Shown here: positions 5,078-47,444 of the stretch, piece after piece
How positions within the stretch are numbered: the first letter of the stretch is position 1
Layout: every line of letters starts with the position of its first letter
IMG/VR virus record: IMGVR_UViG_3300035212_003113
Location: 124,001 to 188,000 of that record
Strand: one strand, 5' to 3'
Length of the DNA: 64,000 nucleotides
The notes under the pieces: model-generated
Told to the model about the DNA's origin: nothing
The model's database searches: none
The model's input: only the letters and a program-made list of their open reading frames with translations
Made by a program: the position numbers and the translations under genes

Positions 5078-5087
5078 CTGGAGATAT

Positions 5088-12960: not shown

Positions 12961-12964
12961 ATCT

Positions 12965-12992: not shown

Positions 12993-13006
12993 ATTGTAAC
13001 GAGGAC

Positions 13007-13618: not shown

Positions 13619-13624
13619 GGCCAT

Positions 13625-15051: not shown

Positions 15052-15061
15052 TGGAGAAAAA

Positions 15062-22092: not shown

Positions 22093-22131
22093 GGTTCGCT
22101 CCCTCTAATTATTCTTTTCTGCAAAAAGCCC

Positions 22132-22374: not shown

Positions 22375-22398
22375 TCACTGCGGCATGCATCTGCCTTG

Positions 22399-25647: not shown

Positions 25648-25666
25648 GAGTCGCCCCCTCTTCTAC

Positions 25667-28600
25667 TCACTTCAGCGGCTCTAGTAATAGCTCTAATGCT
25701 GCCAGTCTGGCTTCTAGATCCTGATTCTTCTGATGCAGCTCCTGGCATGCCTTTACGACGACGGGAAATAGTCGCAGTGGGGTTGCCTCTAATCTATCTG
25801 GATTATCTTTTAGGGCCAGGCCCATCCACTCCGCATTAGCAGCAGTCTGCGCGGCGTCGAGTTCCTGCGCAATGAATCCGCCCTCAAACTTTTCCTGCTT
25901 CTTGCTGCCGTCAGACACCCCCGGTGTCTGGCCGATAACATTGCCTTCGTCGTCGAGGACTGGAGAGGAGTACCACTCACGGCGGTCCCATTTGAACTGC
26001 ACAGGGCGCACGGTCGAGAGAAAATCTATGCCGAGCGAAATGTCTTGGATGTCAGCCTTGTCGCGCGCGTCGGAGATCAGCGTGATCGTGTTAACTGCGC
26101 AACGCAGCGTCGTCACCGACGAGTTGCCAAGCGTGATCTGATTTGTCGCACTAACGGCAGTCGGAGTCGCGCCATTTCCGATACAAGTCAGGTTCGTTCC
26201 TGATAGAAAAGCGACGCCGCCTGCCGTCTGCCCGAGCACGGTGTTCGTGATCTGCGAGCCCAGCCCTCTTCCGACGTTCAAGCCGTTGATCAGCGCATCA
26301 CCGCCTTGAACATCAAGCGTGGCCGCAGGGTTGACGTTCCCGCCAGTCGCATTTACCAGTACCCTGTTGTTTGACGTATCTACTGCAAATATGCGTACTG
26401 AACCGGCTGCATTTTGTACCTGAAATGCAGTGGTATTGCCCGTATTCGCTCTGGCTATAACAGAGCCAGCGATTCCAGCGTTCGCTCTTGCTCCTGCGAC
26501 AATCACTACGTCGCCGCCGTTTGTGTTTCCTACTGCTGCACCGGCTTGAGCAGTCAGAGTGATACTTGTTCCGTTGCCAGACCCGGCCGTGCCACCTGCC
26601 ACTTGCAGCGGCCCTGTAGGCGTCGACGTACCGACTCCGAGCCGTGAGTTCGTGTTATCCCAGAACAGCCTAGCATTATTCTGCGAATAGATGCCTGATG
26701 CGCCAGCGAAAACAACGCTGCCTAGGGTGAACGCGGTTGCCGTTCCCGTGCCGCCGTTCGCTGCACTGACCGTGCTCCATGAAAACGTGCCCGACCCGTT
26801 GTTCGTCAATACGCCCGAAGCGTTCGCTGCCGGGAACGTCGTCGTCTGACCCCGGATGGCGACGATGTCGCCATCCGCGCTGACTTGAAACTGACCCGTC
26901 GTGCCGACGTTGAGCGTCGATGACAACGTGCGCGAACTGGAGGCCACCGTCGTCGTCGTGTAATAGCCAGACGGGAGTGTCAGCCCGCCGTTCACTATCG
27001 TTGGCGTCGCCAAGATGGCAAAATTTGTGGGAGCTAGCAGAGCCGACGCCAGTGTGTTTCCGGTGACGCCCGTTCCGTACCGAACCATGACCGAGCTAGC
27101 AGTGTTCACGTCTCTGACGACGGTTCCAGCCGGGACAAACAGGTCAAACGACGCCTCAACGGTACACACTGCTGTCGTGGTCAGGGAAATAGTCGTACTG
27201 CCGAGCGTGAGAACGCCGCTGAACGTGACCGCAGGGACAAAGCCAATGCCCAACCGGTTGTTCGTGTCGTCCCAGAATAGGTTGTTGTTGTCCTGCGTAT
27301 AGACACCCGACGCGCCAGCGAAGACAACGCTGCCGAGGGTCAACGCAGGGCCGCTCGGTGCAGTTGCCCATGACAGATTGCCTGCACCATCATTAACAAG
27401 AGCTCCTACTGCATCTGGAGTAGGGAACCCGCGATCCAATACGCCGCCGCCTAGTAACTCGTAAGAAGATGCAGTTATCCTGCCGCCATTTGAAATAGTT
27501 ACTTGAGGAATTCCCGTCTCAGAAATATTGAGATAGCCGTCATCAATATTTACTCCTATGGACCAGTCTGCTGGAAATGCAGACTCGCTAAGTTTAGAGA
27601 CCAGGTGCAGGGACGTTGGGCCGAAATACCCATCTGCCCAGCGGTTTGCGTATGACCCTATTTCATATGCAAGATCGGTATCAGGAATGAGCGAGGCATT
27701 TATAGACGTAGTTGTGAGATTACTAAGTGCTCTGTTGGCTATGCTGGCATCGTCTATAGTATCAAGCGCACTCTGAACAGTGGTGTCCGCTGGAGACAAT
27801 ATGCCATTAAAGCTAGCTGTGTCAGTGTATATCGCACTCGCCGGATGATCTGGATCAAGTAGCCCAGAAAGATTACCGTGATCGCTTATCTGATTTATTG
27901 GCAACGAAGAGACTTTGCGCAAGTCTACGTAATTTGCGCCTGTATCGGTGGACACAATTCTACCTTTTATGGCATTTGTATAGGCATTTGCTGTTTGATA
28001 TATAACTGTGCCAATTATCACTATCTCTGCGAATGGCAGACCCGACAGCGTAGCAAGCTCGGTTGTAGCTCCGGAGCGGGCCGCACTTATGTTGTTGTAT
28101 TCGTTTATGCCCTGTATTGCTATAATTGGATGATTTATGTCATTTGTTGCAAAGACATGCACTAGCACGAAATTGCCGCTTGTCAGCTCTGTTAGCTGCC
28201 ACGTAGAGCCGGTCCACTGATTATAAGGAAGCCTCCCGCCAGCACCTGTATAGCCCGCAGTTCCAGAATAGATTATAGGAAATGTGTCGGCCGTCTTACT
28301 TCTCCAATTACCGGAGACTCCCTCTCTAAAGAAAACCGGTATGCTGGCAATTGGAGCAAGCTCCTGGGGGGCACCATCTGTTATTATATGCTTTATGTCT
28401 TCGTCATAAAACATGCCATTTCCGGCAGAAAACTGGCCATGAATTGCGCTGTCTCCGGCGCCGTCAACATTGAAATCGCTTAGTGCGAATCCATTTATAA
28501 AAGCAGCGCCCATGCTATTATGTAGCCACAGGTGCGTTCCGCCGTCCATGACAAGACCATGACGCTCATCTGCAACGTATATCGCCTTGTTGTTTCCGGC

Positions 28601-28912
28601 GTCCCAGTATACGATTGATACGATTGCATAGGATAAAATCAAGTCATCTGAAAATGTTTGTGTGGTCTCTAGCGTGTAGCCATCAAAATAAAAAAACCAC
28701 AGCCCCTCTGTGTCTGTTATAGAAGCAGATGCAGCGGACAGATGAGTATATTTCACTCCTTGTGCATAGTACTCGAAACGAGATGATGTCGGGGTAATCG
28801 TAAGAGTGCGACTTGTGTCATCAAACGACAGCGTCGTGTCGGCTCTGTTGGGAAAACCGGTTGGCTCCTTGGACATCTCATATATTGTCTTTACGTTTGG
28901 ATTGTGCGACAT
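25667..28912 (-). CDS. tail fibre protein B with C-terminal S74 intramolecular chaperone
   Basis: ISDARDKADI...GIDFLSTVRPVQFKW...GFIAQE...VVKACQEL coiled coil; LFWDxTNxRLGxG repeats. Confidence 0.9.
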   Translation of the reverse strand: MSHNPNVKTIYEMSKEPTGFPNRADTTLSFDDTSRTLTITPTSSRFEYYAQGVKYTHLSAASASITDTEGLWFFYFDGYTLETTQTFSDDLILSYAIVSIVYWDAGNNKAIYVADERHGLVMDGGTHLWLHNSMGAAFINGFALSDFNVDGAGDSAIHGQFSAGNGMFYDEDIKHIITDGAPQELAPIASIPVFFREGVSGNWRSKTADTFPIIYSGTAGYTGAGGRLPYNQWTGSTWQLTELTSGNFVLVHVFATNDINHPIIAIQGINEYNNISAARSGATTELATLSGLPFAEIVIIGTVIYQTANAYTNAIKGRIVSTDTGANYVDLRKVSSLPINQISDHGNLSGLLDPDHPASAIYTDTASFNGILSPADTTVQSALDTIDDASIANRALSNLTTTSINASLIPDTDLAYEIGSYANRWADGYFGPTSLHLVSKLSESAFPADWSIGVNIDDGYLNISETGIPQVTISNGGRITASSYELLGGGVLDRGFPTPDAVGALVNDGAGNLSWATAPSGPALTLGSVVFAGASGVYTQDNNNLFWDDTNNRLGIGFVPAVTFSGVLTLGSTTISLTTTAVCTVEASFDLFVPAGTVVRDVNTASSVMVRYGTGVTGNTLASALLAPTNFAILATPTIVNGGLTLPSGYYTTTTVASSSRTLSSTLNVGTTGQFQVSADGDIVAIRGQTTTFPAANASGVLTNNGSGTFSWSTVSAANGGTGTATAFTLGSVVFAGASGIYSQNNARLFWDNTNSRLGVGTSTPTGPLQVAGGTAGSGNGTSITLTAQAGAAVGNTNGGDVVIVAGARANAGIAGSVIARANTGNTTAFQVQNAAGSVRIFAVDTSNNRVLVNATGGNVNPAATLDVQGGDALINGLNVGRGLGSQITNTVLGQTAGGVAFLSGTNLTCIGNGATPTAVSATNQITLGNSSVTTLRCAVNTITLISDARDKADIQDISLGIDFLSTVRPVQFKWDRREWYSSPVLDDEGNVIGQTPGVSDGSKKQEKFEGGFIAQELDAAQTAANAEWMGLALKDNPDRLEATPLRLFPVVVKACQELHQKNQDLEARLAALELLLEPLK

Positions 28913-28928
28913 ATTTACTCCACCCTGA

Positions 28929-31900
28929 TCAGATTATCCACCAAGCGCTGCCATCCGATTGAATCTTTATTGCTTCATACTGTGTGCTGAGCGTGTATGT
29001 TGTCGCGCCGTCTATTAGTTCGGACGCATCAGCATCTACGGTGACAATATTCGCCGTGATGTCTTTTTTCTTTATAGTAAATATGCGTTCGACTGCTGAT
29101 GCAGCGGATGGCAGCGTCATCGTTATTGCGCCGGAAGAAGCATCGGCCAAAATTGTGCCATCGGAAGAGGCCAGAGTATAATTGGCAGTTTTGGTTGAAA
29201 TCGGCGCAGTGCTGTTCTGTGCGGCGCCCGAGGTCCATGACAGAGTTCCGCTTCCATTGTTTGTTAGAATAGAATTTGCAGAGCCCTGAGATGATGGGAA
29301 GCTATATGGGATATCGTTTATTCTAGTTAGATCCCCGCTAGAGCTTACCTGGAACTGCGAGCTGGCGCCGACGGATAGCGCCGAAGCTGGCGCGTTCGTA
29401 CCGACACCGACACGCGCATTCGTCGTGTCGACGTCGAAGATGGTCGAGCCCGCTGCGTTCTGCACCGAGAATGCGGTCGTGCCGTCCGACGTGTTCCTCG
29501 AGAGCACGACGCCGTCGTTGCCGACGCTGAAAGTGGTCGTGCCGTTATCACGGGCAAGGAAGATTGGATCGCCCTTGTCCATGTTGTCTGCTATCAGCGC
29601 CGCTGAGGCGTTGACCGTAGGCTGCGACGCGCCTGTGGTCTGCAAAGCGAACAGGCCGCCGATGCGGATACCGCTGTTGTTCTTCGCCATGCCCGTGACG
29701 GCTATGTTGGCACCAGTGCCGTCGCCTGTTGTGTTGCCGAAGACGGCGTAGTTGCGGGCGCCGTTCGACGCGAGGCCCATCATACCGATGTTGTGGCCAG
29801 ATGCCGTCGTGCCCGCAGCCGAGCCTTGCAGCGCGAAGTTGGCTTGTAGCGCCGAGACGGGGTCTTGTCCGCTGCCTGCGATCACGGTGCCGAAGCTGCC
29901 CGCGTAAGAAGTTGACGGCGTACCTGCGCCGCTCAAATAACCGATAACGCCGTAGACCGGGGCGACGACGCTCGCAGATACGCTTCCTTCAATGTACGAA
30001 ACGATGGTTCCGCCGCCAGGGGTCAGGGTTGCGTCGACGTTCAGCGCGTACACGCCACTGGCCGTCGAGCCTGCCTGCACGTCGACGACGTGCGCCGGAG
30101 TTGCTATGCCTACGCCTAGGCGATTATTTGAATCGTCCCAGTACAGGTTGGAATCCGATGATAGCGATGAAGTGCCGCTCCAAAATGCCACGCGCGTAGC
30201 TACGCCACTGCCTGTAACAGTACCTGCTGGTGACCATGACAGGTTGCCCGAGCCATCATTTGTCAGCGCGCCCGACGCATTCGCCGCCGGGAACGTCGTC
30301 GTCTGGCCCCGGATAGCGACAATGTCGCCCGAGGAATTAACTTGGAACTGAGAGGATGAGCCAACAGATAATAGCGATATAGGACTTGTAGTCCCTATGC
30401 CAACGCTCCCGGCATTTGTGATACGCACACGCTCAGTCGTTGAGCTGCCTAACGTAGTAAATCCATCAGTGCCGCTAGCAGTCGTGTGAAATTCAATTCG
30501 ACCGCCGCTCGCCGTCGACGTAAAAGCCTGCTCGGCCTTCATAGTCATCATCGCGCCGTAGTTAATGCCGCCCGTGGCAGTCCAACCTGCACCGAGCACA
30601 TTGATCATGCCGTCGCCAGCGCCGATCTGCGTCGGCGCGGCCTTCGTTCCTCTCGAACGCACACCGGCAAACTGACCACCGCGATATGACTCTTGAAGCA
30701 CGGTTCCAGCGGCGCCGTGCCCAAGCATCACCGCGCCTGCTGTCACGTCAGAACTGTCAAACGTAAACTGCCCGTATACAGTCGACGTTCCAACCAGAAA
30801 CACGGGCGATCCGCCCGACTGCTGGAAGCGCGCGATCTCCGTGCCGTTGACGCCGACACCGATAATATCGTTCGACGGCGAGAAGAAGCCGCTGTTCAGG
30901 TTGTCGCGGAAGGCGACGGCGGGAGCGGCGGCGCTACCATCGGGGATGGCGAGTTGGCCGCTGGCGATGTCAAGGGCGGCAACGGGGGCGTTGGTGCCGA
31001 TACCCAGTTTACCGCTGCCCGTGTTGTCCCAATAGAGGTTCGCATTCGACGACAGCGACGAAGCGCCATCCCAGAATGCCACACGCGTTGCAGTACCGCT
31101 GCCGGTGACCGTGCCACTTCCGCCCGCCGCAGCCCACGACACGTTGCCGGCGCCGTCTGTCGTGAGTACTTCACCGCTCGCGCCGTCTATCATTGGAAGG
31201 GTAAATGCATCGCTTATATTTACCGGAGTGGTGACGGAACCGATGGTTACCCCAGTTGTTAAATAATAGGCCGAATTATTTCCTATTTTAATTGGTCCGC
31301 CATCATTATCAATCCACAGCGGCTTCTCAATCGGATACTCGTTATTGGTATAGCGAAGCGAAAGACCAGGCGAGAATCCAAGTGACCCCTGAAGCTGTAG
31401 GAGTGCAGTGTCGTCGGTAGCGCCGAGCTTAAGATAAAGCGCAGGGTCGCCCAGATCTAGACCGAGTGCAGCCTCGTTGCCCCCTATAGAAGGGACCAAC
31501 GGCCCCGCCACAAATCGGGCATACTGACTGGATAAAATTCCTTCTACTCCAAGATTCTCGACTACCACTGCTCCAGTAGTCAGCCACTTCAAGGCAGAGC
31601 TGCCGTCAAAAACTCCTGCATTGCTAAATTGAATCGCCCGATCTGGACCGCCTGGTGCGCCACTTGCAGGCGAATCCCACGATAGATTTCCGGCTCCATC
31701 GTTCGTTAATACAGTTCCGGCAGAGCCCACGGCCGCAGGCCAGGCCGCATCAACGCCTCCAGACCCCAGAAACAAGGTTCCTATTGCAGAAATCTGAATG
31801 TCAGCAAAGCTTGACAGCGATATATTTTCTGTGCCAGAGACAGAAAACTCGCCATTCCCGGAATCCGTTGTAATCGTGTTGCCCGACTCATAAGCAGCCT

Positions 31901-32216
31901 GTAAGCTAGAGCTAGCAGAGGAAAGAAGGGCAAGTAGGCTGTCAACACTTATTTTATTTAACTCTGTAGAGGCATAATCTATGTACGCAATGTAGCCGTC
32001 TAGCAGCGGTGGTACTATTGGAGCCACCAGGAATTCGCCATAAAAGTAGCCATCTGCCGAGCCGGACAACCCCTGATATGACCCACCATCCAGTGAAAGC
32101 TCTATTCGGCCAAGGTCGTAGTTATACCTAATTATGGCCATACCGGCTTCTGGAACGCCTAGACCCTCGCCCGCCCTAAAGGTCAGAAAAGGAATTGTTT
32201 GTTTTTTCTGCGTCAT
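28929..32216 (-). CDS. tail fibre / virion surface protein A
   Basis: GAGGAG RBS before ATG 32216; repeated LTxDGxGNxSW, ERVRITNAGSVGIGT; C-terminal TKTANYTL...SDGSAWWII domain. Confidence 0.85.
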   Translation of the reverse strand: MTQKKQTIPFLTFRAGEGLGVPEAGMAIIRYNYDLGRIELSLDGGSYQGLSGSADGYFYGEFLVAPIVPPLLDGYIAYIDYASTELNKISVDSLLALLSSASSSLQAAYESGNTITTDSGNGEFSVSGTENISLSSFADIQISAIGTLFLGSGGVDAAWPAAVGSAGTVLTNDGAGNLSWDSPASGAPGGPDRAIQFSNAGVFDGSSALKWLTTGAVVVENLGVEGILSSQYARFVAGPLVPSIGGNEAALGLDLGDPALYLKLGATDDTALLQLQGSLGFSPGLSLRYTNNEYPIEKPLWIDNDGGPIKIGNNSAYYLTTGVTIGSVTTPVNISDAFTLPMIDGASGEVLTTDGAGNVSWAAAGGSGTVTGSGTATRVAFWDGASSLSSNANLYWDNTGSGKLGIGTNAPVAALDIASGQLAIPDGSAAAPAVAFRDNLNSGFFSPSNDIIGVGVNGTEIARFQQSGGSPVFLVGTSTVYGQFTFDSSDVTAGAVMLGHGAAGTVLQESYRGGQFAGVRSRGTKAAPTQIGAGDGMINVLGAGWTATGGINYGAMMTMKAEQAFTSTASGGRIEFHTTASGTDGFTTLGSSTTERVRITNAGSVGIGTTSPISLLSVGSSSQFQVNSSGDIVAIRGQTTTFPAANASGALTNDGSGNLSWSPAGTVTGSGVATRVAFWSGTSSLSSDSNLYWDDSNNRLGVGIATPAHVVDVQAGSTASGVYALNVDATLTPGGGTIVSYIEGSVSASVVAPVYGVIGYLSGAGTPSTSYAGSFGTVIAGSGQDPVSALQANFALQGSAAGTTASGHNIGMMGLASNGARNYAVFGNTTGDGTGANIAVTGMAKNNSGIRIGGLFALQTTGASQPTVNASAALIADNMDKGDPIFLARDNGTTTFSVGNDGVVLSRNTSDGTTAFSVQNAAGSTIFDVDTTNARVGVGTNAPASALSVGASSQFQVSSSGDLTRINDIPYSFPSSQGSANSILTNNGSGTLSWTSGAAQNSTAPISTKTANYTLASSDGTILADASSGAITMTLPSAASAVERIFTIKKKDITANIVTVDADASELIDGATTYTLSTQYEAIKIQSDGSAWWII

Positions 32217-32401
32217 ATGCTCCTCAGCGCCAGGGGATCCAGCCCAATACAATGCACGGAGAACCATAGTTATTAAATGCGGGTGGTCCGCGAGCATTAA
32301 TTATATTTGCGTCAGATCGCAAACAAGCCGCGACCGCCGGCTGCAACTGAAGGCAACTAATTGAATAACAGTCTTTCTGATCTTTTCACATGGAGCAAAT
32401 A

Positions 32402-33487: not shown

Positions 33488-35389
33488 ATGAAGTATTTTG
33501 TATACAAAGTAGATCACGACTTTAAGCGGCCAGGTGGCTTTCAAGAGGCCACGGATGCAGAGGACAAGATATGGTCGTGTCTAAAGATGTTTCACCAAGA
33601 AGTCGACAGCATCGACAATGCTGACATAGCCTTTATAGGATTGAATAATGCTTCATTTTACTTCAATAAGGGTGACCTTAAGAAAGTGTGGCAAGAGTCT
33701 GTTTGCCCAAGACTCGTCAATAAAGATATCCCACATGTGGCAATATTCACTTACGTTATAAATGAAGATGACCTGAGCTTTATCCCGCCATGGATAACAA
33801 TATGGGCATACGAAACAGAATGCTCGCATCACGACTCCCCGTCTCTGCAGACCACGGACAGCGGATGCGGAGACCGGATGTGCATGATACCATATGTACT
33901 CACTCCTCAGACACATCCTGCGGCAGGAGTTATTGAGACCACAAATATAAATCCTGAAAACTTCAATACCGAGCTGTGGACCAGGAGATCTAACACGGCA
34001 TTTATAGGCTCTTTACAGGCAGGCGGGCGACCGCGCATAAATACTCGCGCTAGCCAAGTTATTGGCTGGCAGTCGCAAATTGGGTGCGACATATATGGAG
34101 ATCGACAAGCTACCGAGCCAAATGACACGTACTCTAGATACAAATTCGCTCTAATTCTGCGAGGGGATACTCCGACTCGTAAAGCGTTCTATCAAGCCAT
34201 TGCAGCCGGGGCAATTCCAGTAATTACTGAAAGCGCATGGCAACAGTACAGCGAGCTGTACAGAGGTCATTGCGAAAGCCTGGCCGACATAGTCGTAGTT
34301 GTGCCAGATAATGCCGAGCTATGGGACTGCGCCGAAATACAAAAGATCCTAAATAAAAGAGCAATGGAGTGCGCTACGTTGCTTCCACGGCTGCACAGCT
34401 GGTCGAGCAAATATCTTGATTATGACAGCGGCGGGGTCGTAGATGCGGCAATGCGCGCAACTCTGGCCAAAGTGAGGAAGCCAGCCATGCCCTTGGCATA
34501 CATCCACTCACTGGAGCCAGCAAGCGTATATCGACCGACAAGCGTAAAGATTAGTGAACAAGAGGTGATAACTGAAGAAAACATACTAGAAAGCCAGTAT
34601 GCCCTGGAGCAAATAATTCTCAAAACCGTCTACAACTATCCTTATAAAACTGGTTGCCTAGACAAGGCAACGGCTGCAATAGTACCAGTTCATACCTTTT
34701 TAACATGCTGGAATCGGCCGAATCACTATTCCGTGATCGACTCTGTAAACGTAATAAAAAAAGCTTTAAATGCGCTCCCTGCATGGAAAAACAGCAGCGT
34801 GCCCCATTACCTTGGATATGCCGATGTTCTTTGGAATGACGAGCGCGTCTTTCTCCGACACGTAGATATTCCTGATAATACAACAGTTATTGCCCTGGAG
34901 GCTTGCGACCTTCCGGTGCAACAAGAGGCAGTCCCATTTCCATGCGGAAGCATGCCTGGTGTTCTTTCATCAGCGGATCGGCAATTAGCTGTGTACATAG
35001 GAAGGGAGAGAGAAGAGGTCAGCGGGTACGATATCGATTACGAGATGATAAACACACCTGGCTGGCACTCTACAAATACCCAAAACACCAGGATTGTGCA
35101 GGCCTACTCCCAGCATAAATTTTCTTTGCAACCTCACGGAGACCGAGTGACAAGGCGAGGCTTCTATCAGTCCGTGGCATGCGGGTGCATACCCGTGATT
35201 ACTGCTGACTGCGTCAAGGCGTATAGCGATGCTACCGGGCTGGATGTATCAGAGTTTTGCATAATTATCCCGGAGTGGCACGAAAACGTTGTAGAACTAT
35301 TGCGACAATCAGACTTCGAGTCCATGCAAAAGAAATTGCCCCAGTTATCATTATCAGGCAGGATCTTGAAAATCACGGGGTTGTACTGA
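33488..35389 (+). CDS. exostosin-family (GT47-like) protein with two tandem domains
   Basis: FALILRGDTPTRKAFYQAIAAGAIPVI and FSLQPHGDRVTRRGFYQSVACGCIPVI. Confidence 0.85.
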   Translation: MKYFVYKVDHDFKRPGGFQEATDAEDKIWSCLKMFHQEVDSIDNADIAFIGLNNASFYFNKGDLKKVWQESVCPRLVNKDIPHVAIFTYVINEDDLSFIPPWITIWAYETECSHHDSPSLQTTDSGCGDRMCMIPYVLTPQTHPAAGVIETTNINPENFNTELWTRRSNTAFIGSLQAGGRPRINTRASQVIGWQSQIGCDIYGDRQATEPNDTYSRYKFALILRGDTPTRKAFYQAIAAGAIPVITESAWQQYSELYRGHCESLADIVVVVPDNAELWDCAEIQKILNKRAMECATLLPRLHSWSSKYLDYDSGGVVDAAMRATLAKVRKPAMPLAYIHSLEPASVYRPTSVKISEQEVITEENILESQYALEQIILKTVYNYPYKTGCLDKATAAIVPVHTFLTCWNRPNHYSVIDSVNVIKKALNALPAWKNSSVPHYLGYADVLWNDERVFLRHVDIPDNTTVIALEACDLPVQQEAVPFPCGSMPGVLSSADRQLAVYIGREREEVSGYDIDYEMINTPGWHSTNTQNTRIVQAYSQHKFSLQPHGDRVTRRGFYQSVACGCIPVITADCVKAYSDATGLDVSEFCIIIPEWHENVVELLRQSDFESMQKKLPQLSLSGRILKITGLY

Positions 35390-36100: not shown

Positions 36101-37795
36101 ATGAGCGCGCAATGGCTGCCGGTACTGGCAAGCCCTAAGACAAGTAACAAGCATCTCGGGAGAAAAGGTCAAGTGACTTTTTCCGGCGATGCCTTTGATA
36201 AACTTGTTGCAAGCGCAAATATCTCGCTGCAGAACTGGCCGCGCATGGTGCCGCACCGTGCCGAATTTCGCGTTCTAGTCGAGGCGACATTTCCTGGGTT
36301 CTGGGCGCGAGCAGAGGGCGTTGGCGTAGAGCTGGCTACGCGTCTTGTCATGGCCGCCGGACGTGCCGCCGAGACTGGTGCAGCAGTCAAGATCCCAGCT
36401 GGCGATGTTTTTCTATATAAAGCGAAGCAGCTAGGTTTTGCTCAGAAAAAGAACCACTCTTACTTTGCAGAGCGCGAGCGCGCTCGTCAGTTTGTTGCGC
36501 GACGTGGCGGTGGCAGCAGCGCATCACGTATCCTAAAAGATGCCGTAAATAAACTAGGCATGCAGAATCACTGCAGCATTGCCGTCTATGCTGCGCCAAG
36601 CGCCACTCACGTAGTGTTGATACCACATTCTGCCGACGCAGATGTCGGCAGAGTTTATACTGCCGGCCGCGGCGACCAATTCTATCTGGCTGCCGAAGAA
36701 GCAGGAAACAACAACAATCATGTGTCGCGCTACATGACCAGCGTACCAGTAGGCCGCTGGCAGTCTACCGCCTCTAGGCAGCAAATACTGCAGCTTATTG
36801 ATGAGCGCTGCTCACATGCTGGTTATCGCGAAATTCTAAAAGAGACCGTGATCGTCGGCATGGCGAGCGACTTTCGCTCAAACTATATTCAAGAGCACGA
36901 CTCGCAGCGAGTATTTGCGACTGGCGCCAGCATGCAGTTTATGCCATCCTGGTTGCGCAGTGCGTTGTTTCCAGAATGGTTTGAGATGGACTTCTCAAAC
37001 ATGCATCTTGCAATCCTCAATAGCCAAGCCGATCTCGGCATCAACCTGGATACTTCTATTTGGACCCAGATCATGGATACCTGGGAGACTGCGATCAATG
37101 CCGCAGGAGAAGCCCTGGGTCGCGAGGCGATGCTAGATGAGGCCGGAATAAAAGACCTGTTCGACGGCAGCATGAACAGCGGAAATAGCAAAACACTGTT
37201 TTTCGATACCTCCAAGGTTGATCGGACTGCCCTAAAGAAGGCGCTAAAGGTGAGCCTATATAGCCTGCAATTCGGGATGACAGCGCCAGCAGCGCGGCGC
37301 GGCTTTACTGGCGACTTGCTTAAAATGGGCTTCTCGCGCGGAGAGGCTACATTCCTGGGGAACCTTTGGTCACGCGATCCGATCCTGCAAAAGATTGCCA
37401 GTGGTATAAAGGCATACTGCGAAACACATGCCATTAGCCCCAGCGAATTGGCGCTCCGCTGCCAGGCAATCGAAACCACCCTGGTAAAAGAAATCTATAC
37501 AGTTGCACGCAGATTTAAGCGCTCAGACGTCTGCATCACCCTGCACAGCCATGACGGTGTATCAGTGTGGTCGCGTAGCGCGAGCGTAGGGCGAAAGTTT
37601 CATGCGCGCTGTGCGGCACGATGTGCGCGCCTTCTGGAGAAGCTAGGAATCCAGTCACGACTGGAGAGCAAAGGCTTGCCAAAAGAGGTCCGGACAGAAA
37701 AGGCACCCGCGCCCAAGTCAGAAGTGACGTCTTGTGTAGAACTGGCCCTGGTCACTGAGCGCGATTCACGTCCCGTGGCAACCGGCCCTCCTTAG
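36101..37795 (+). CDS. divergent family-A-like polymerase (TV-Pol-like), no exonuclease motifs seen
   Basis: RVF...MQFMPSWLR, EMDFSNMHLAIL (motif A), RxxLKxxLKxxLYxxxFG (motif B), LHSHDGV (motif C). Confidence 0.7.
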   Translation: MSAQWLPVLASPKTSNKHLGRKGQVTFSGDAFDKLVASANISLQNWPRMVPHRAEFRVLVEATFPGFWARAEGVGVELATRLVMAAGRAAETGAAVKIPAGDVFLYKAKQLGFAQKKNHSYFAERERARQFVARRGGGSSASRILKDAVNKLGMQNHCSIAVYAAPSATHVVLIPHSADADVGRVYTAGRGDQFYLAAEEAGNNNNHVSRYMTSVPVGRWQSTASRQQILQLIDERCSHAGYREILKETVIVGMASDFRSNYIQEHDSQRVFATGASMQFMPSWLRSALFPEWFEMDFSNMHLAILNSQADLGINLDTSIWTQIMDTWETAINAAGEALGREAMLDEAGIKDLFDGSMNSGNSKTLFFDTSKVDRTALKKALKVSLYSLQFGMTAPAARRGFTGDLLKMGFSRGEATFLGNLWSRDPILQKIASGIKAYCETHAISPSELALRCQAIETTLVKEIYTVARRFKRSDVCITLHSHDGVSVWSRSASVGRKFHARCAARCARLLEKLGIQSRLESKGLPKEVRTEKAPAPKSEVTSCVELALVTERDSRPVATGPP

Positions 37796-37992: not shown

Positions 37993-38379
37993 ATGAAATT
38001 AGAACAAAGTCTTCATATCATGAATGAGTTAGAATTATCACGCTACTTGCTCGCCCGCGGGTTTCCCGAGGAGCTACCGTGTTTCTCTGTCTACGACCTC
38101 TCAATGTTCATGATGGGTCGCCAGGTCACGGAGGCTGAGATTATTACTGGTGGCAAGTCCGTATGCTTGTTTTGGTCATCTAAGAATCTAATTGCTACTA
38201 CAAATATTCTAGAGGAGCCGTGTGCAAGCACCGTTATTCTATCTTCTTTGCGTGGCAGCAATTTCTCTATCTCACTGAGGAGAGCCGGGTTCCACAGTTC
38301 TATTCATCCAATTCAATATACTCCAGAGTGGGTGGACTGTTTTGTGTTTTCGTTGGGCGCGGGGGTGAAGTATGAGTAA
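37993..38379 (+). CDS. hypothetical protein, module gene X1 (paralog of 39173..39559)
   Basis: Shared MKLExxLH, GFP, CxFWSS, LRGSxFS, SIHPxxYTPEWVxCFVF. Confidence 0.75.
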   Translation: MKLEQSLHIMNELELSRYLLARGFPEELPCFSVYDLSMFMMGRQVTEAEIITGGKSVCLFWSSKNLIATTNILEEPCASTVILSSLRGSNFSISLRRAGFHSSIHPIQYTPEWVDCFVFSLGAGVKYE

Positions 38380-39157
38380 GACGGCAGCGCAACAGTATGC
38401 CGAGCTTAAACGAAATAAGCTAAACGCCGCGCGTCAAGCAAAGCTAGAATTAGCTGCATCTAGAGCCAGAAGAGCATCTGTTGCCAAAGATGACAGCATT
38501 GTGCCTTCTGCATCTGCCAATACTATCGGGAAAAGGAATATGAAAAAGGTACCGCTTTACTTCAATTTTGTTGGATCCAGACGCGACATGCTTGACACAG
38601 CGATGGAGTCATATGATCGAGTCGCTGGCGATCTGATAGACGTCAGAGTGCACTATTCATACAGACCGCGCAGATTCACAGAATGCTTAAATGAAATCCT
38701 GAAGATAAATGATGAGCCATACTTCTTCGCTCACTTTGATTCTGTTCTGACAGATCGTAGCGCTATAGAGAATATCCTTGCACATGAGCCAGGTCCCGCT
38801 GGACTAGTAGCGCACTGCTTGATTGTGGACCTTCTCATGTTGGTCGTGCCGAAGGCCGTAAGAAGCATAGGCGGGTGGGACGAAGCATACAGCAATTCCT
38901 GCATGGATCTCGACCTGCAACAGCGGCTGCATAGGAGTGGCCAGACGATGCACATAATTCATTCTGATATAGAGCAGGGCCGCGGAGTTGATCATTTTAA
39001 TGCCAGTGCCGCTAGAAAAGATCCTGCTATGAGAAAAGTGTATGGCGTAACAATGCAGCAGGATTACGACCGATACTATGACAAGTATCACAATCGGTCG
39101 GACCCAGGCTATTTGCATGTGTGTGAGTACATTAAAAAAGAATTTGGCGACGGCTGA
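38372..39157 (+). CDS. GT2-like glycosyltransferase with shared N-terminal tag
   Basis: FAHFDS, IGGWDE, MDLDLQQRL; N-terminus paralogous to 39556..40896. Confidence 0.75.
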   Translation: MSKTAAQQYAELKRNKLNAARQAKLELAASRARRASVAKDDSIVPSASANTIGKRNMKKVPLYFNFVGSRRDMLDTAMESYDRVAGDLIDVRVHYSYRPRRFTECLNEILKINDEPYFFAHFDSVLTDRSAIENILAHEPGPAGLVAHCLIVDLLMLVVPKAVRSIGGWDEAYSNSCMDLDLQQRLHRSGQTMHIIHSDIEQGRGVDHFNASAARKDPAMRKVYGVTMQQDYDRYYDKYHNRSDPGYLHVCEYIKKEFGDG

Positions 39158-39172
39158 TCTGGACTAGTCGGC

Positions 39173-39559
39173 ATGAAGCTTGAAGATCAACTGCATTTGC
39201 TAGAGCCTGTCAGCCTTGCAAGATTTTTTTCTTCCTGCGGTGGGTTTCCATCAGATTGCCAGAGTATGTCCGCGCACGAGGTCGCAGTGAGCTTGCTCAA
39301 CAGAGAGCTGTACGAAGCAGAATGGTCCACTGGAAACATGGAAACTGCTTGTGTATTCTGGTCATCAGGAAAGCTACGCTTAATAAGGCGTCAAACTTTT
39401 GACACTTTTGTGCCGCATGTGGTGGTGGTATCTGCACTTAGGGGTAGTTCGTTCTCGGCAAATGCTGTGCGCCTTGGTCTTTTGCGCTCTATTCATCCTT
39501 TTGCATACACTCCTGAATGGGTCGAATGTTTTGTGTTTGGCGCTAGGGGGGAGGTATGA
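39173..39559 (+). CDS. hypothetical protein, module gene X2 (paralog of 37993..38379)
   Basis: Same conserved blocks as X1; ATGA-coupled to next gene. Confidence 0.75.
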   Translation: MKLEDQLHLLEPVSLARFFSSCGGFPSDCQSMSAHEVAVSLLNRELYEAEWSTGNMETACVFWSSGKLRLIRRQTFDTFVPHVVVVSALRGSSFSANAVRLGLLRSIHPFAYTPEWVECFVFGARGEV

Positions 39560-40896
39560 GCAAGACAGCAGAGCAACGTTATGCCGAGTTCAAGAGGAAT
39601 AGGCTAAATGCCGCGCGACAGGCCAGGATAGAAATGGCCAAGGAAAGGATGCGCAAAGCCTCCGCCATTAAAAATAGCGCCATTTCTTCTAGTCAGACAA
39701 CTGTATTAGATAGCCCGCCCCAAGAGTCACCGATAGCAGTCAGCCATGTAGATAGTTCTTCTGCCGAGCAAGCAAGCACCATTAGTGATGGCTTGTATCA
39801 AGGCCTAGGTGATGAAGAATTTATAATACGACAATTCAAGGATTTCTGTGGTCGCAGTCCCAGTGCAGGCGAACTCAATGCCCATGTCGGTTCGCTTGCA
39901 TCCATGTCGCGATCCGCCGTCAATGACAGATTTGCTTACTGTGACGAGGTCGTGCGCCGTACATGGGCACACAAGAGTGCGCCATTTGATTCTCGATCTA
40001 CATTTAGCGGCTTCCATGGATTGCGAATTGCTGTTCTTCTTACTGGTCACCTAAGAACATTTAAGCAAACCTATCCTGTTTTGCGTTCGCAATTAATTAC
40101 CCCGGCATCCGCAGACGTTTTTGTTCATACGTGGGATACGCTAGGCATCCAGAGGCATGATCCTATATATGGTCCTATTCCTGATGACACTCTAAAAGTC
40201 GATATCTCTGAGATATATAGACTGCTTCCGGAGACGGTTGACGTTAGAGTAGAGGGCAATGCTGCATTTATCGCATGTGCGAAAACGCGCAACAGTCGTC
40301 CATATGTATTTGGATCAGGCAGTGGTCCTAATTCGAAAATGCTTAGCGCTAAGCCGGTTCTTATCGAGAGTCAGTTGTACGGCATATCTTCTGCTTTTAA
40401 GCTAATGGAGCAGCACGAAATAAAAAACGGCTTCAGATATGATCTTGTTATAAAGCTACGCTCGGACATGGAGGTTTTAGATTTTTTTCCTGATCTGGCA
40501 AATTTGAGCACAAAGGATCTTTGGGTTTCAAGCCCACCAGAGAATAATCACAACCACCCTGTATGCTTTGCATGCGAGAGAGGGCCGCACGAAGGGTGTC
40601 ATGCGACAGATGTGTGCGATACATATGCATATGGTGGCCGCGAAGCGATGGCACATTACTGCAGTCTGTGGGATAATCTCGAGACAGTATATGCCCGCAT
40701 GTGCGCAGAAAATAATGTTAATATTATGGATCCAACCGCATCTCACGGTCTTAGGGATGGGCACGTAGTTGTTCCAATTTGGAAAAATGGCGCTAGCCAT
40801 CGTCTGCATTGCTTTTATCCAGAAAGAATACTAAGACTGTATCTAGAGGGCTGGCATCTGAAAAAAGGACGCGTTTCGTGCAAGGTGAAGCGATGA
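39556..40896 (+). CDS. shared tag + DUF4214-like domain + putative glycosyltransferase domain
   Basis: LGDEEFI...GRSP...SR...F..E segment; IAVLLTGHLRTF, DVFVHTW, YDLVIKLRSD, PE. Confidence 0.7.
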   Translation: MSKTAEQRYAEFKRNRLNAARQARIEMAKERMRKASAIKNSAISSSQTTVLDSPPQESPIAVSHVDSSSAEQASTISDGLYQGLGDEEFIIRQFKDFCGRSPSAGELNAHVGSLASMSRSAVNDRFAYCDEVVRRTWAHKSAPFDSRSTFSGFHGLRIAVLLTGHLRTFKQTYPVLRSQLITPASADVFVHTWDTLGIQRHDPIYGPIPDDTLKVDISEIYRLLPETVDVRVEGNAAFIACAKTRNSRPYVFGSGSGPNSKMLSAKPVLIESQLYGISSAFKLMEQHEIKNGFRYDLVIKLRSDMEVLDFFPDLANLSTKDLWVSSPPENNHNHPVCFACERGPHEGCHATDVCDTYAYGGREAMAHYCSLWDNLETVYARMCAENNVNIMDPTASHGLRDGHVVVPIWKNGASHRLHCFYPERILRLYLEGWHLKKGRVSCKVKR

Positions 40897-41095
40897 ATAA
40901 GACGCACCTGCACTTCAACCATGCCGGTGCTCAGTCGTACGGCTGCATCATCCAGTATGTATGCTGCATTAATGAAGGCTGACCTGGAGACATGTTGTAG
41001 TCAAAAAGCGATCCAGATCTCCTCAGACTTGAGGCGCATATTCTAGAGGTATTTGGATAAACACACGATCTGCATTATAATTTTAAAACAAACAG

Positions 41096-41782
41096 ATGAT
41101 GAAAAAAATCGCAATCATAATGCCAACTCGTTCCGCTGGCGGCATCCGTAATACGGCTGCCCAACTAGCTTTTGCCAGCTGGCAGGCAACAACCTCTGGT
41201 CACTCCGACTTCTATTATGGCATGGACACAGATGATCATCATCTTTATGTAGTGCCTGCTGGTGCGAAAACTCTTATAAATGAGAGGTTGCGCCTTGTGC
41301 CAAAGCTAAATAGGATGGCGCAGCAGCTTCAAGAAGAGTACAAGTATTTGTATTTCATAGGCGATGATCATAGATTTGTGACAGCTGCATGGGAAGAGCG
41401 CTTTCTAGAGGATGCCGAAAAGACAGCTGGTTTAACCATAATGTACGGTAATGATCTACTGCAGGGTGCGGCTCTACCGACTGCGGTCTTCATAAGTACT
41501 GCTATCACCTCTGCGCTTGGCTTTATGGCACCTCCATGCATTCAGCATATGTATGCTGATAATTTTTGGAAGGACCTGGGCAGCTCTCTCGGTGTACTAA
41601 AATACTATCCCGATATCATAGTAGAACACATGCATTTCTCAGTTAAGAAATCTAAGTCTGATGCACAATATCGTGAGGTTGCTGCCCTACATAGATCTGA
41701 TGAAGTTGCTTATAAAGAATATCTAAAAAATACTTTTTCTGCTGATATTGAGCGCGTGAGGAAGGCGTGCGGATTGCTGTAG
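41096..41782 (+). CDS. GT2-family glycosyltransferase
   Basis: IIMPTR, DTDD, FIGDDH, HMYADN, VEHMH. Confidence 0.85.
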   Translation: MMKKIAIIMPTRSAGGIRNTAAQLAFASWQATTSGHSDFYYGMDTDDHHLYVVPAGAKTLINERLRLVPKLNRMAQQLQEEYKYLYFIGDDHRFVTAAWEERFLEDAEKTAGLTIMYGNDLLQGAALPTAVFISTAITSALGFMAPPCIQHMYADNFWKDLGSSLGVLKYYPDIIVEHMHFSVKKSKSDAQYREVAALHRSDEVAYKEYLKNTFSADIERVRKACGLL

Positions 41783-46481: not shown

Positions 46482-46745
46482 GTGGAAGATAATAAGGGGC
46501 GGCGTTTCTTTCGCCGTCGAGACCGCAACGAGGATGACTCGTTTGAGGTCAAAGTAGTACTCCGTGATGGAGAGACTGCTGAGTCGTTAGTTAGACGTTT
46601 CAAATGGGCCGTTGAGGCCAGTGGCGTACTGAAGGAGGTGAAAGATCGTGAATACGCCATGACGCCGTCTGAAAAAGCAAAATTCAAACAGCGCCGCGCT
46701 GCAAAGCGCCGAAACAAGTCTAGGCAAGATCGAGACGAGGGATGA
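46482..46745 (+). CDS. rpsU: ribosomal protein bS21
   Basis: VVLRDGETAESLVRRFK...GVLKEVKDREYAMTPSEK...AAKRR. Confidence 0.88.
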   Translation: MEDNKGRRFFRRRDRNEDDSFEVKVVLRDGETAESLVRRFKWAVEASGVLKEVKDREYAMTPSEKAKFKQRRAAKRRNKSRQDRDEG

Positions 46746-46750
46746 TTCCC

Positions 46751-46778
46751 AAACGGCCGGAGTAAAATCCGGCCGTTT
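46751..46778 (+). terminator. hairpin terminator after rpsU
   Basis: aaacggccgga-gtaaaa-tccggccgttt. Confidence 0.75.
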
Positions 46779-46856
46779 CTGCTATTAAATGGACAGCTGT
46801 ATTTTGTCTGCAGTTTAAGGCCACTGGATCTAGCTTGCAGAGTAGGAGTATAATTC

Positions 46857-47444
46857 GTGGCTAGACCTAAGAAACCAATTACGCCAATCGCGCCGCCACC
46901 GATCCAGCAGGGCCGGGATCGCATACTGCCGCACAATCCAAAGCGCAGCATATTGCTATTTGGAGAAGTGAATACAGATATGACAAAGCAACTGGCGGAG
47001 CAGATAGCGGTTCTCCTAAAAGAGGACGATAAGAGTCCTATTTGCGTAGTGGTCAATACTGAAGGAGGCGGTGTTTATGAATCATTTGCAATGCATGATC
47101 TCATTCGCGCCTGTTCCGTGCCGATCTACACGTACGGTCTTGGTACGGTAATGAGCGCCGGCACGATTATGCTTGCAGCAGGCAAAAAGCGGTATGCTTA
47201 TCCTAACTGCTGGATCATGGCTCATGAGCCGTGGTTTGTTGGCTCAGAGCTACGAGCAGGCGAGCTGAAAGCAGACCTGATGCACAATGAAAAACTGAGC
47301 ATGGTTTTCTACGGGCTTTATAGCCGTTACTGTCAGAAGCCAGCAGACATTATTGAAAACGATCTAAATGGCAGGACGATATACTTCAATGCAATCGAGG
47401 CGAAGAAGTATGGATTTGTGGACGACATCGTAGATATCGACTAG
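46857..47444 (+). CDS. clpP: ClpP-family protease
   Basis: LFGEV, NTEGGGV, VMSAG (Ser), MAHEP (His), YFNAIEAKKYGFVD. Confidence 0.9.
   Translation: MARPKKPITPIAPPPIQQGRDRILPHNPKRSILLFGEVNTDMTKQLAEQIAVLLKEDDKSPICVVVNTEGGGVYESFAMHDLIRACSVPIYTYGLGTVMSAGTIMLAAGKKRYAYPNCWIMAHEPWFVGSELRAGELKADLMHNEKLSMVFYGLYSRYCQKPADIIENDLNGRTIYFNAIEAKKYGFVDDIVDID

What the first reader, a model, noticed from the sequence alone, without database searches (positions are those of the whole stretch)
37993..40896. Duplicated two-gene module: partner protein X plus a common N-terminal tag fused to different glycosyltransferase domains
Seen: X1 (37993) and X2 (39173) are paralogs, each overlapping the start of a downstream gene. 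Those genes begin MSKTAAQQYAELKRNKLNAARQAKLELA and MSKTAEQRYAEFKRNRLNAARQARIEMA. Similarity stops after ~40 aa, then a Ser-rich linker leads to a GT2-like domain in one and DUF4214-like plus an unrelated GT-like domain in the other. Many differences in the tag are synonymous or conservative, suggesting selection. Inference: a plug-and-play system in which the basic helical tag, with X as adaptor, docks exchangeable sugar transferases onto a common target (virion, DNA or membrane). I know no described system with this layout.
Basis: partly seen in the sequence, partly recalled or inferred. Interest (0 to 1): 0.82.

Follow-up and report, generated by a model that had tools for sequence, protein, structure and literature searches.

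The report
Mosaic glycosyltransferase cassettes in huge phage
Two neighbouring gene pairs in an uncultured 372-kb lake phage each combine a small orphan gene with a sugar-transferase that starts with the same basic helical peptide; relatives show this is cassette shuffling in a hypervariable glycosylation island, and the small gene is not a partner specific to the peptide.

Summary
X1/X2 are paralogs (39% identity, E=3e-30). Each overlaps a downstream gene whose first ~40 residues are shared (E=5e-15). The catalytic parts are unrelated GT-A folds: GT2-like, and DUF4214-like plus GT6-like. The window is part of a 371,675-bp IMG/VR phage contig. At least five lake metagenomes hold the same arrangement.

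Twelve related phage lineages share the order RNase HII, 564-aa gene, X, then a variable sugar-enzyme cassette. X is an orphan: 6 clusters in 1.84 billion proteins, a confident predicted fold, and no structural match. It is the constant leader gene, not a tag-specific partner.
- It also precedes enzymes that carry a different ~125-aa N-terminal domain, or no N-terminal module.
- Tags occur without X.
- X types and tag types reassort, with a sharp breakpoint at the X|tag junction.

The tag is a selected peptide: synonymous sites are saturated while pN is 0.06-0.21. It is a +7/+8 helix followed by a disordered linker. Orthologs of the GT2-like enzyme lack the tag. A decayed copy of that enzyme lies downstream of tagGT2 at 40893-41095. 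So X1-tag1::GT1 arrived from a divergent relative and replaced the resident copy.

The most likely role of the tag is an anchor-plus-stem tether. This is inferred, not shown. The glycosylation target is unknown.

The parts
36101..37795 (+). Conserved 564-aa gene of the left flank (no family hit). It is followed by a 197-nt intergenic region before X1.
   Evidence: Present upstream of X in every relative. No Pfam, PHROG or PDB sequence hit.
37993..38379 (+). X1: orphan 128-aa alpha/beta protein, the leader gene of cassette 1. Its stop overlaps the tagGT1 start by 8 nt.
   Evidence: AF2 pLDDT 89, pTM 0.82. No fold match in PDB or BFVD. 80% identical to the X of L003. Omega 0.09 against L003.
38372..38491 (+). 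tag1: basic helical N-terminal peptide (codons 1-40, net charge +7).
38492..38539 (+). Linker 1 (16 aa, Ser/Ala/Pro-rich). It ends in an SD-like AAGGA just before the ancestral GT1 start codon.
38540..39157 (+). GT1 catalytic domain (GT-A, GT2-like). It begins at Met57, which is the start codon of the untagged orthologs.
   Evidence: Alignment A4. Atlas features 0.97 and TM about 0.6 to GT2-family clusters.
39173..39559 (+). X2: paralog of X1 (39%). It lies 15 nt after the GT1 stop. Its own stop overlaps the tagGT2 start (ATGA).
   Evidence: 85-87% identical to the partial X of L009.
39556..39684 (+). tag2: basic helical peptide (codons 1-43, net charge +8), predicted as a single helix spanning residues 5-43.
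   Evidence: pLDDT 83-92.
39685..39786 (+). Linker 2 (residues 44-77), Ser/Pro-rich, predicted disordered.
   Evidence: pLDDT below 50 for residues 44-77.
39787..39990 (+). DUF4214-like helical domain (about residues 78-145).
   Evidence: Pfam E=0.0085, sub-threshold. Profile hit to phycobilisome-linker-type domains at E=2e-6. Helices at 86-139.
40003..40896 (+). GT-A catalytic domain with a GT6-like fold and a conserved His/Cys cluster. Homologs match DUF7796 weakly.
   Evidence: Foldseek PDB probability 1.0, E about 1e-5 to GTA/GTB, BoGT6a and alpha3GalT..
40893..41095 (+). Decayed remnant of a resident untagged GT1 gene: a 5' piece, a 3' piece and the conserved spacer before the next gene.
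   Evidence: tblastx and blastn to the GT1 region of L004: 50% over the first 18 codons, 65% over 20 C-terminal codons, 81.5% nucleotide identity over 65 nt of 3' end plus spacer.
41096..41782 (+). Constant 228-aa glycosyltransferase (phrog_14945), the start of the conserved right flank. FAD oxidoreductase, epimerase and TIM-barrel genes follow it.

Best explanation
The region is a mosaic part of a hypervariable glycan-synthesis island in an uncultured ~372-kb freshwater phage.

Shown:
- X is an orphan, well-folded small protein under purifying selection. In all 12 related lineages it is the constant first gene after a conserved flank (RNase HII, then the 564-aa gene), and it is usually translationally coupled to whatever enzyme follows.
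- The first enzyme after X usually carries an exchangeable N-terminal appendage. This is a ~40-aa very basic helix plus a disordered linker (the tag), an unrelated ~125-aa basic domain (N-dom), or another basic helix. Two lineages have none.
- The ancestral order was X, tag-DUF4214-GT6-like, untagged GT1, GT228. In this phage a second cassette, X1-tag1::GT1, came in from a divergent relative and sits upstream. The resident GT1 then decayed to a ~200-nt remnant.
- Recombination breakpoints fall at module borders (X|tag).

Inferred:
- The tag acts as an anchor and the linker as a stem. Together they tether a neutral or acidic catalytic domain to a shared, probably polyanionic, site where the glycan is built: DNA, an anionic membrane face or an acidic partner.
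- With both enzymes tagged here, two steps of one pathway would be co-localised.
- X is a shared first-gene factor of the island, not a tag-specific adaptor. It may be a subunit, regulator or specificity factor. Its biochemical role is unknown.
For: Anatomy.
Synteny and what follows X.
X is an orphan: 2 hits in 5.8 billion proteins, 6 clusters in 1.84 billion, no Pfam or PHROG family, and no PDB or BFVD fold match despite pLDDT 89.
Selection.
Tag structure and charge: helix 5-43 and disordered 44-77; net charge +6 to +10 and pI 11 for the tags, against pI 6.0-7.7 for the catalytic domains.
GT folds.
Untagged GT1 orthologs start at the residue that corresponds to Met57.
The pseudo-GT1 remnant.
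Mosaicism: X2 is about 92% identical in nucleotides to L009 up to its end, and the tag drops to about 51-55%. dS differs several-fold between the flank with X and the GT genes in the same phage pair.
The same N-dom is fused to two different catalytic architectures, is absent from an ortholog, and in one phage is in a separate ORF from the catalytic domain.
The arrangement recurs in independent samples.
Against: No direct evidence shows what the tag binds. Its hydrophobic moment is low (0.3-0.4), which argues against a classic amphipathic membrane helix. No nucleic-acid-binding family matches it either. The tag on GT1 is a single instance, and the selection signal may predate the fusion. An internal SD plus ATG at 38540 could yield untagged GT1. 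A contact between X and the N-terminal modules was not tested and is not excluded: 11 of 13 X copies precede a protein with some N-terminal module. The loci are phylogenetically related, so counts of co-occurrence are not independent.
Confidence: 0.6

Rival explanations
1. One reading: X is an adaptor that binds the basic tag and docks exchangeable transferases onto one target.
For: X lies immediately upstream and overlaps the start codon in all five X-plus-tag junctions seen (window twice, L003, L004, L009). X was duplicated or acquired together with a tag in the window. Both parts are under purifying selection. X is mildly acidic and the tag is strongly basic.
Against: X also precedes tag-less enzymes in 7 of 12 lineages, with the same ATGA coupling in L014, L020 and L021. 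Tag-type proteins occur without X (L007 P0006, L008). Each X type is seen with two tag types, and there is a recombination breakpoint at the junction. There are no further tags elsewhere in the 372-kb genome by a strict pattern.
Confidence: 0.15
2. Accidental fusion: tag1 and its linker are the leftover 5' end of a deleted tag-DUF4214-GT6-like gene that happens to be in frame with GT1. The active enzyme is made from the internal start at 38540, and the tag on GT1 has no role.
For: Met57 is exactly the ancestral start, and an SD-like AAGGA precedes it. All four orthologs are untagged. The tag::GT1 fusion is seen only in this phage, and its twin contig is near-identical, so there is no post-fusion divergence to measure.
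Against: The 56-codon extension is open and in frame. Its start codon is coupled to the X1 stop with a G-rich SD. The resident GT1 decayed after the tagged copy arrived, although this is also compatible with use of the internal start. N-terminal modules are likewise gained and lost on other enzymes of the island (N-dom), which suggests a recurrent and therefore useful architecture.
Confidence: 0.2
3. The target is phage DNA. The island hypermodifies DNA bases with sugars, and the Arg/Lys/Ala-rich helix is a non-specific DNA-binding arm.
For: The tag is a very basic helix. The island lies among replication and repair genes: RNase HII, primase-like, SbcCD, ligase, dUTPase-like. A GT4 'conflict-system' glycosyltransferase lies at 4004-5077. 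Phage GT-A enzymes that add and extend glycans on 5hmC DNA are known (bioRxiv 10.1101/2023.12.21.572611).
Against: No cytosine methyltransferase, 5mYOX/TET or thymidylate-synthase-like hydroxymethylase was found among the window genes scanned. Relatives carry GT11-like, GT7-like and pyruvyl-transferase genes typical of polysaccharide synthesis. Tail-fibre-like genes adjoin the island. The tag matches no DNA-binding family.
Confidence: 0.2
4. The target is a lipid-linked or envelope glycan, or virion fibres. The tag or N-dom holds the enzyme at the anionic inner-membrane face, or on an acidic protein partner.
For: Structure and feature neighbours of the GT6-like domain include bacterial 'capsular biosynthesis' clusters. 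Sugar-nucleotide enzymes flank the island. Four ~1100-aa tail-fibre-like genes lie directly upstream, one with a Peptidase_S74 chaperone domain. Phage virion glycosylation is known (cited in PMC12619734).
Against: The tags have low hydrophobicity and a low hydrophobic moment. No membrane protein, flippase or polymerase genes were seen in the island.
Confidence: 0.25

Closest known systems
Phage-encoded glycosyltransferase clusters: DNA-hypermodifying GT-A/GT-B pathways (10.1101/2023.12.21.572611) and mycobacteriophage virion glycosylation (cited in PMC12619734)
   Same: Several successive phage GTs with GT-A folds are clustered with sugar-metabolism genes. Gene content is highly variable between relatives.
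   Different: No base-hydroxymethylating or methylating partner genes were found nearby. The acceptor is unknown. The constant orphan leader gene X and the exchangeable N-terminal tag or N-dom are not mentioned in the passages of the two papers I searched by keyword; I did not read either paper in full.
Golgi-type glycosyltransferase architecture: N-terminal anchor, flexible stem, GT-A catalytic domain (e.g. GT6 blood-group transferases). The architecture is from general knowledge; the fold match is.
   Same: A short N-terminal helix, a disordered Ser/Pro-rich stem, then a GT-A (GT6-like) catalytic domain.
   Different: The helix here is strongly basic and hydrophilic, not a transmembrane segment. 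The proteins are phage-encoded and presumably cytoplasmic.
Small chaperone or adaptor encoded upstream of a cargo with an N-terminal binding region (type III secretion class I chaperones, T6SS Eag-type adaptors). Recalled from general knowledge.
   Same: A ~130-aa mildly acidic alpha/beta protein is encoded just upstream of, and coupled to, a protein with an N-terminal appendage.
   Different: No fold or sequence similarity was found. X also precedes proteins without the tag. There is no secretion context.
Mosaic module exchange at gene and domain borders in phage host-interaction loci (general phage biology)
   Same: There are sharp identity breakpoints at the X|tag border, strongly unequal dS between adjacent genes, cassette replacement and a decaying resident copy.
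   Different: Here the exchanged units include an N-terminal targeting-like peptide moved onto another enzyme.

Membership tests
GT2-family GT-A glycosyltransferase (GT1 catalytic domain, residues 57-261) | GT-A fold resembling GT2 enzymes | tested here: met
   Atlas structure TM 0.57-0.63 over residues ~55-261 to GT2-family clusters; feature score 0.97. This compares predicted models only.
GT2-family GT-A glycosyltransferase (GT1 catalytic domain, residues 57-261) | Pfam GT2-type HMM above the gathering score | tested here: not met
   No hit at E<=1 for the window protein. The L004 ortholog gives Glyco_trans_2_3 at E=0.094, 13 bits against a cut-off of 27.
GT2-family GT-A glycosyltransferase (GT1 catalytic domain, residues 57-261) | Acidic motifs for nucleotide-sugar and metal binding and a catalytic base | tested here: inconclusive
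   Invariant GGWDE ... MDLDL..RL in four orthologs resembles the GT2 hallmark as I recall it. It was not mapped on a structure.
GT6 family (catalytic domain of tagGT2) | GT-A fold closest to GT6 structures | tested here: met
   Foldseek against the PDB: top 50 hits are GTA/GTB, BoGT6a and alpha-1,3-GalT, probability 1.0, E 6e-6 to 6e-5, TM (target-normalised) 0.31-0.48.
GT6 family (catalytic domain of tagGT2) | Sequence membership (Pfam family) and the DxD/NxN plus catalytic Glu motifs | tested here: not met
   No GT6 Pfam hit at E<=1. About 10% identity in the structural alignments. The motifs were not mapped.
DUF4214 | Pfam HMM above the gathering score | tested here: inconclusive
   E=0.0085, 16.6 bits against 23.2; the same level in P0007. 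A family profile hits phycobilisome-linker-type domains in the PDB at E=2e-6.
DUF7796 | Pfam HMM above the gathering score | tested here: inconclusive
   Distant homologs P0019 and P0020 reach 25.9 and 24.8 bits against 27, over the first ~40 profile positions only. Atlas neighbours include DUF7796 clusters.
   7 of 12 X-bearing lineages have no tag after X. Two tag-type proteins have no X in front.
   An X1-type X with a tag2-type tag (L003); an X2-type X with an L004-type tag (L009); a breakpoint at the junction.
Known nucleic-acid-binding basic helices (bZIP basic region, arginine-rich motifs) | Match to a curated family or a solved homolog | tested here: not met
   No Pfam hit at E<=1. A tag profile against the PDB gives only a helical M-like protein repeat at E=0.0016. 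The resemblance is compositional only.
Phage DNA sugar-hypermodification gene cluster | GTs clustered with C5-methyltransferase, 5mYOX or a ThyS-like hydroxymethylase | tested here: not met
   None among the window proteins scanned with Pfam or PHROGs. The rest of the 372-kb genome was not examined.

The most novel reading that the evidence does not exclude
X together with the exchangeable N-terminal modules (the basic tag or N-dom) forms a dedicated docking system in a clade of huge freshwater phages. X would be a hub, or the primed acceptor, at which interchangeable glycosyltransferase cassettes are recruited, so that recombination can re-program the glycan without re-evolving targeting. Such a protein-level 'plug-and-play' glycosylation platform has not been described for phages.
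Probability: 0.15. Interest if true: 0.75.

Novelty: new variant of a known kind. Interest (0 to 1): 0.45.

Why it matters
Phage glycosyltransferase islands are known to be variable. How new enzymes are integrated into an existing pathway is rarely visible. This locus preserves the intermediate states side by side:
- a basic anchor peptide moved onto a second enzyme;
- the replaced resident gene caught in decay;
- recombination breakpoints at module borders;
- a second, unrelated N-terminal module that behaves the same way in relatives.

It also marks out a confidently folded orphan protein (X) that heads the island in every known relative. X is a concrete target for finding what huge phages glycosylate (DNA, virion or host envelope) and how the enzymes are directed there.

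Tried and rejected
- Near and protein-level searches of GenBank phages with the region, tagGT2 and X found nothing.
- A word-index search with the tag alone (region 1-45) found only the query itself.
The strict pattern found only this phage and its twin in IMG/VR and nothing in 185,579 prokaryotic genomes. Divergent tags would be missed by it.
- A tag HMM run on six-frame translations of the window and all loci found no further tags. It did not detect the basic N-termini of P0011 and P0012, so I treat these as analogous and their homology as unproven.
- N-dom looked to me like the N-terminal half of a GT9 heptosyltransferase. No Pfam or PDB sequence support was found, so I dropped this.
- A Roadblock/LAMTOR-like fold for X: only low-probability Foldseek hits (E of at least 0.37, TM 0.2-0.3). 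Rejected.
- A programmed frameshift fusing X to the downstream gene: rejected. The downstream frames differ (+1 for X1/GT1, -1 for X2/GT2), and relatives have spacers of 4-28 nt.
- An amphipathic membrane helix: the hydrophobic moment is only 0.3-0.4. Weakened, not excluded.
- RNA evidence: a single 151-nt contig inside X1 in one putative RNA run. This is too little to claim transcription.
- Promoter and terminator scans gave no more sites than shuffled sequence.
Full report
**1. What is there**

- X1, 37993-38379, 128 aa.
- tagGT1, 38372-39157, 261 aa. Its ATG lies inside the end of X1 (ATGAGTAA, 8-nt overlap).
- X2, 39173-39559, 128 aa. It starts 15 nt after the tagGT1 stop.
- tagGT2, 39556-40896, 446 aa (ATGA overlap).

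X1 and X2 are 39% identical (E=3e-30). The two enzymes align only at their N-termini (E=5e-15). The window is part of a 371,675-bp IMG/VR contig. It encodes Lon, GroEL, DNA ligase, peptide deformylase, ClpP, S21, SbcCD and tail-fibre-like genes, so it is an uncultured huge phage. A second IMG/VR contig from another sample differs at one base in 6.7 kb. At least five lake-water DNA runs hold the stretch. Contigs from further lake and river runs bridge the X1/tag and linker/GT1 junctions without a difference. The arrangement is real.

**2. The parts**

*tagGT2.* AlphaFold2 on an 18-sequence alignment gives pLDDT 86. The model has a single helix at residues 5-43 (pLDDT 83-92), a disordered segment at 44-77, a small helical domain at 86-139, and an alpha/beta domain at 158-446.
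- The helical domain is the sub-threshold DUF4214 hit. At profile level it resembles phycobilisome-linker-type domains (E=2e-6).
- The catalytic domain is GT-A. By Foldseek its nearest solved structures are GT6 enzymes: human GTA/GTB, Bacteroides BoGT6a and alpha-1,3-GalT (probability 1.0, E about 1e-5).
- By sequence it belongs to no curated GT family. Distant homologs touch DUF7796 just below threshold. Atlas neighbours are phage proteins and bacterial 'capsular biosynthesis' clusters.

*tagGT1.* Residues 57-261 resemble GT2-family GT-A enzymes by Atlas features (0.97) and predicted structure (TM about 0.6). No Pfam model reaches threshold.

*The tags.* They are very basic (net +7 and +8, pI 11). 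The catalytic domains are neutral to acidic (pI 6.0-7.7). The hydrophobic moment is low (0.3-0.4).

*X.* It has no Pfam or PHROG family and no PDB sequence match. It has only two hits among 5.8 billion clustered proteins and six clusters among 1.84 billion representatives with a profile. It nevertheless folds confidently from five sequences (pLDDT 89, pTM 0.82; order beta-alpha-alpha-beta4-alpha-beta). There is no significant structural neighbour in the PDB or BFVD and no look-alike in the Atlas. Thirteen columns are invariant across nine diverse members, including E49, H105 and C116.

**3. Comparative evidence**

Look-ups of homologs, scans with an X profile, and contig retrieval gave 12 X-bearing lineages and one without X. 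All share the same order: RNase HII, a 564-576-aa gene, X, a variable sugar-enzyme cassette, then a conserved right flank. The right flank has a 228-aa GT, FAD oxidoreductase, epimerase, TIM-barrel protein, IMPDH/GMP-reductase-like protein, S21 and ClpP.

What follows X:

| Lineage | Gene(s) after X |
|---|---|
| window X2, L004/5/6, L009 | tag + DUF4214 + GT6-like |
| L003 | tag, then the contig ends |
| window X1 | tag + GT2-like (only here) |
| L007 | a different basic N-terminal helix + DUF4214 + GT6-like (P0012) |
| L010/11, L014/15, L022 | unrelated ~125-aa basic N-terminal domain (N-dom) + DUF4214 + GT6-like |
| L020/23 | N-dom + DUF4214 in one ORF, GT6-like catalytic domain in the next ORF |
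| L012/13 | N-dom + GT11-like + GT2 |
| L016 | a plain GT2 |
| L021 | a dehydrogenase-like gene, then the GT11-like + GT2 enzyme without N-dom |

Tags also occur without X. In L007, P0006 follows the untagged GT1. In L008, P0011 has a degenerate basic N-terminus and a 335-nt ORF-free gap upstream. So X is the constant leader of the island, not a partner specific to the tag. The tag is one of at least two alternative N-terminal modules. N-dom itself sits on two different catalytic architectures and is absent from an ortholog. It has no Pfam or PDB sequence match.

**4. Selection and mosaicism**

Tags are constrained as peptides. For tag1 against tag2, pS=0.77 (saturated) and pN=0.21. For tag2 against the L003 tag, pS=0.91 and pN=0.057. 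X is under purifying selection in five close pairs (omega 0.08-0.29). Over longer distances it is the most diverged gene of the neighbourhood: 30-45% identity, where its neighbours keep about 45-90%.

X types and tag types reassort. The L003 X is 80% identical to X1, but its tag is about 89% identical to tag2 (33/37 by my own count of the aligned sequences; 80% over 43 aligned residues). The L009 X is 85-87% identical to X2, but its tag is of the L004 type. At the nucleotide level, by eye in alignment A8, the window and L009 are about 92% identical to the end of X; over the tag they drop to 51%. That is a recombination breakpoint at the X|tag border. In the L004-L007 pair, dS is 0.31-0.37 for the 564-aa gene and X. 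For the GT genes it is 1.96 or saturated. X1 against X2 (40%) is as diverged as X between lineages. The second cassette was therefore acquired from a divergent relative, not duplicated recently in place.

**5. How the window arrangement arose**

Orthologs of GT1 in L004, L007, L010, L020 and L022 are 204-214 aa and untagged. They start at the residue that corresponds to Met57 of tagGT1 and lie downstream of the GT6-like gene. In the window, the 200 nt between tagGT2 and the 228-aa GT (40893-41095) still hold three traces of such a gene:
- its first codons, overlapping the tagGT2 stop as in L004;
- its last ~20 codons;
- the spacer, 81.5% identical in nucleotides to L004.

So the ancestral order X, tagGT2, GT1, GT228 existed here. 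X1-tag1::GT1 was inserted upstream, and the resident GT1 then decayed. The fusion joins tag and linker in frame to the ancestral GT1 start. An SD-like AAGGA remains before that internal ATG at 38540. A short untagged isoform is therefore possible.

**6. Mechanism**

Shown: the modular anatomy, the selection on the tag and on X, the translational coupling, and the cassette exchange.

Inferred: the tag and linker act as anchor and stem. They would tether otherwise neutral catalytic domains to a common, probably polyanionic, site. With both enzymes tagged here, two steps would be co-localised.

What the anchor binds is open.
- DNA. For: the basic helix, the replication-gene context, a GT4 'conflict' GT at 4004-5077, and known DNA-glycosylating phage GT-A enzymes. 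Against: no hydroxymethylase or methyltransferase partners were seen.
- An anionic membrane face, lipid-linked glycan or virion fibres. For: capsule-like relatives, polysaccharide-type genes in relatives, and adjacent tail-fibre-like genes. Against: the tags have a low hydrophobic moment.

The biochemical role of X is unknown. A contact with N-terminal modules in general is not excluded, since 11 of 13 X copies precede a protein with some N-terminal module. Specific pairing with the tag is contradicted.

**7. Comparison and novelty**

The nearest known things are:
- phage GT clusters for DNA hypermodification or virion glycosylation;
- the anchor-stem-GT-A layout of Golgi GT6 enzymes, where the anchor is a transmembrane helix, not a basic helix;
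- chaperone-plus-N-terminal-region pairs of secretion systems, with which no fold or sequence similarity was found.

I found no description of X, the tag or N-dom. Two literature searches (DUF4214 with glycosyltransferase; DUF7796) returned nothing. Papers on huge phages mention GTs only generically.

I rate this a new variant of a known kind: a hypervariable phage glycosylation island with an orphan leader gene and exchangeable N-terminal targeting-like modules. Its 'exchangeable enzymes behind a common N-terminal peptide' idea is partly right.

Noticed in passing
window 40893-41095: Decayed remnant of an untagged GT1 gene between tagGT2 and the 228-aa GT. It has a 5' piece overlapping the tagGT2 stop, a 3' piece, and a spacer 81.5% identical in nucleotides to L004.
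   Followed up: yes
window 18559-32297 (minus strand): Four paralogous ~1080-1180-aa genes. One has a Peptidase_S74 (endosialidase-chaperone) domain and another has head-decoration/Ig-like PHROG hits. They are probably tail fibres or spikes directly adjoining the sugar island. Relatives also have giant minus-strand genes here.
   Followed up: partly
window 33488-35389: A 633-aa protein with two Exostosin/GT47-like regions (E=1.2e-21). It is also present in L014 but absent from L004. The variable sugar region therefore extends to the left of RNase HII.
   Followed up: partly
window 4004-5771: Two further glycosyltransferases sit among replication genes: a GT4 'conflict-system' family member (PF20706, E=1e-6) and a 227-aa GT2/MGAT2-like protein, near a dUTPase/dCTP-deaminase-like gene (596-1114).
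   Followed up: no
window 36101-37795: The conserved 564-aa protein upstream of X has no family or PDB hit. By eye it has motifs reminiscent of family A polymerase motifs A and C (DFSNMHLAIL; HSHDGV). Not tested.
   Followed up: no
L020 5390-7018 (= L023): The N-dom + DUF4214 part and the GT6-like catalytic part are separate adjacent ORFs (247 and 289 aa). This is either a natural split or a frameshifted gene.
   Followed up: partly
L007 5383-8871: This relative carries two paralogs of the DUF4214 + GT6-like enzyme. One, after X, has a different Lys-rich N-terminal helix. The other has the tag but no X. A 72-aa ORF and the untagged GT1 lie between them.
   Followed up: partly
window 54711-62807: A 2698-aa ORF without any Pfam hit at E<=0.001, preceded by a weak sigma-70 region-2-like protein (53957-54745) and a PD-(D/E)XK/Cas4-like nuclease (53177-53947).
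   Followed up: no
window 10540-16774 and 46482-47444: Host-like proteostasis and translation genes in a phage: Lon protease, peptide deformylase, GroEL, ribosomal protein S21 (46482-46745, 90% identical to L004) and ClpP.
   Followed up: partly
window 38123-38273: One 151-nt contig from a putative RNA run lies inside X1, with one T>C difference at 38235. This is too little to call transcription.
   Followed up: partly
window 41096-41782: The constant 228-aa GT has 35-38% identical homologs annotated as glycosyltransferase in ~130-kb Streptomyces phages, next to heptose-phosphate nucleotidyltransferase-like genes. It also matches part of a PHROG annotated as DNA methyltransferase (phrog_2675).
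   Followed up: partly
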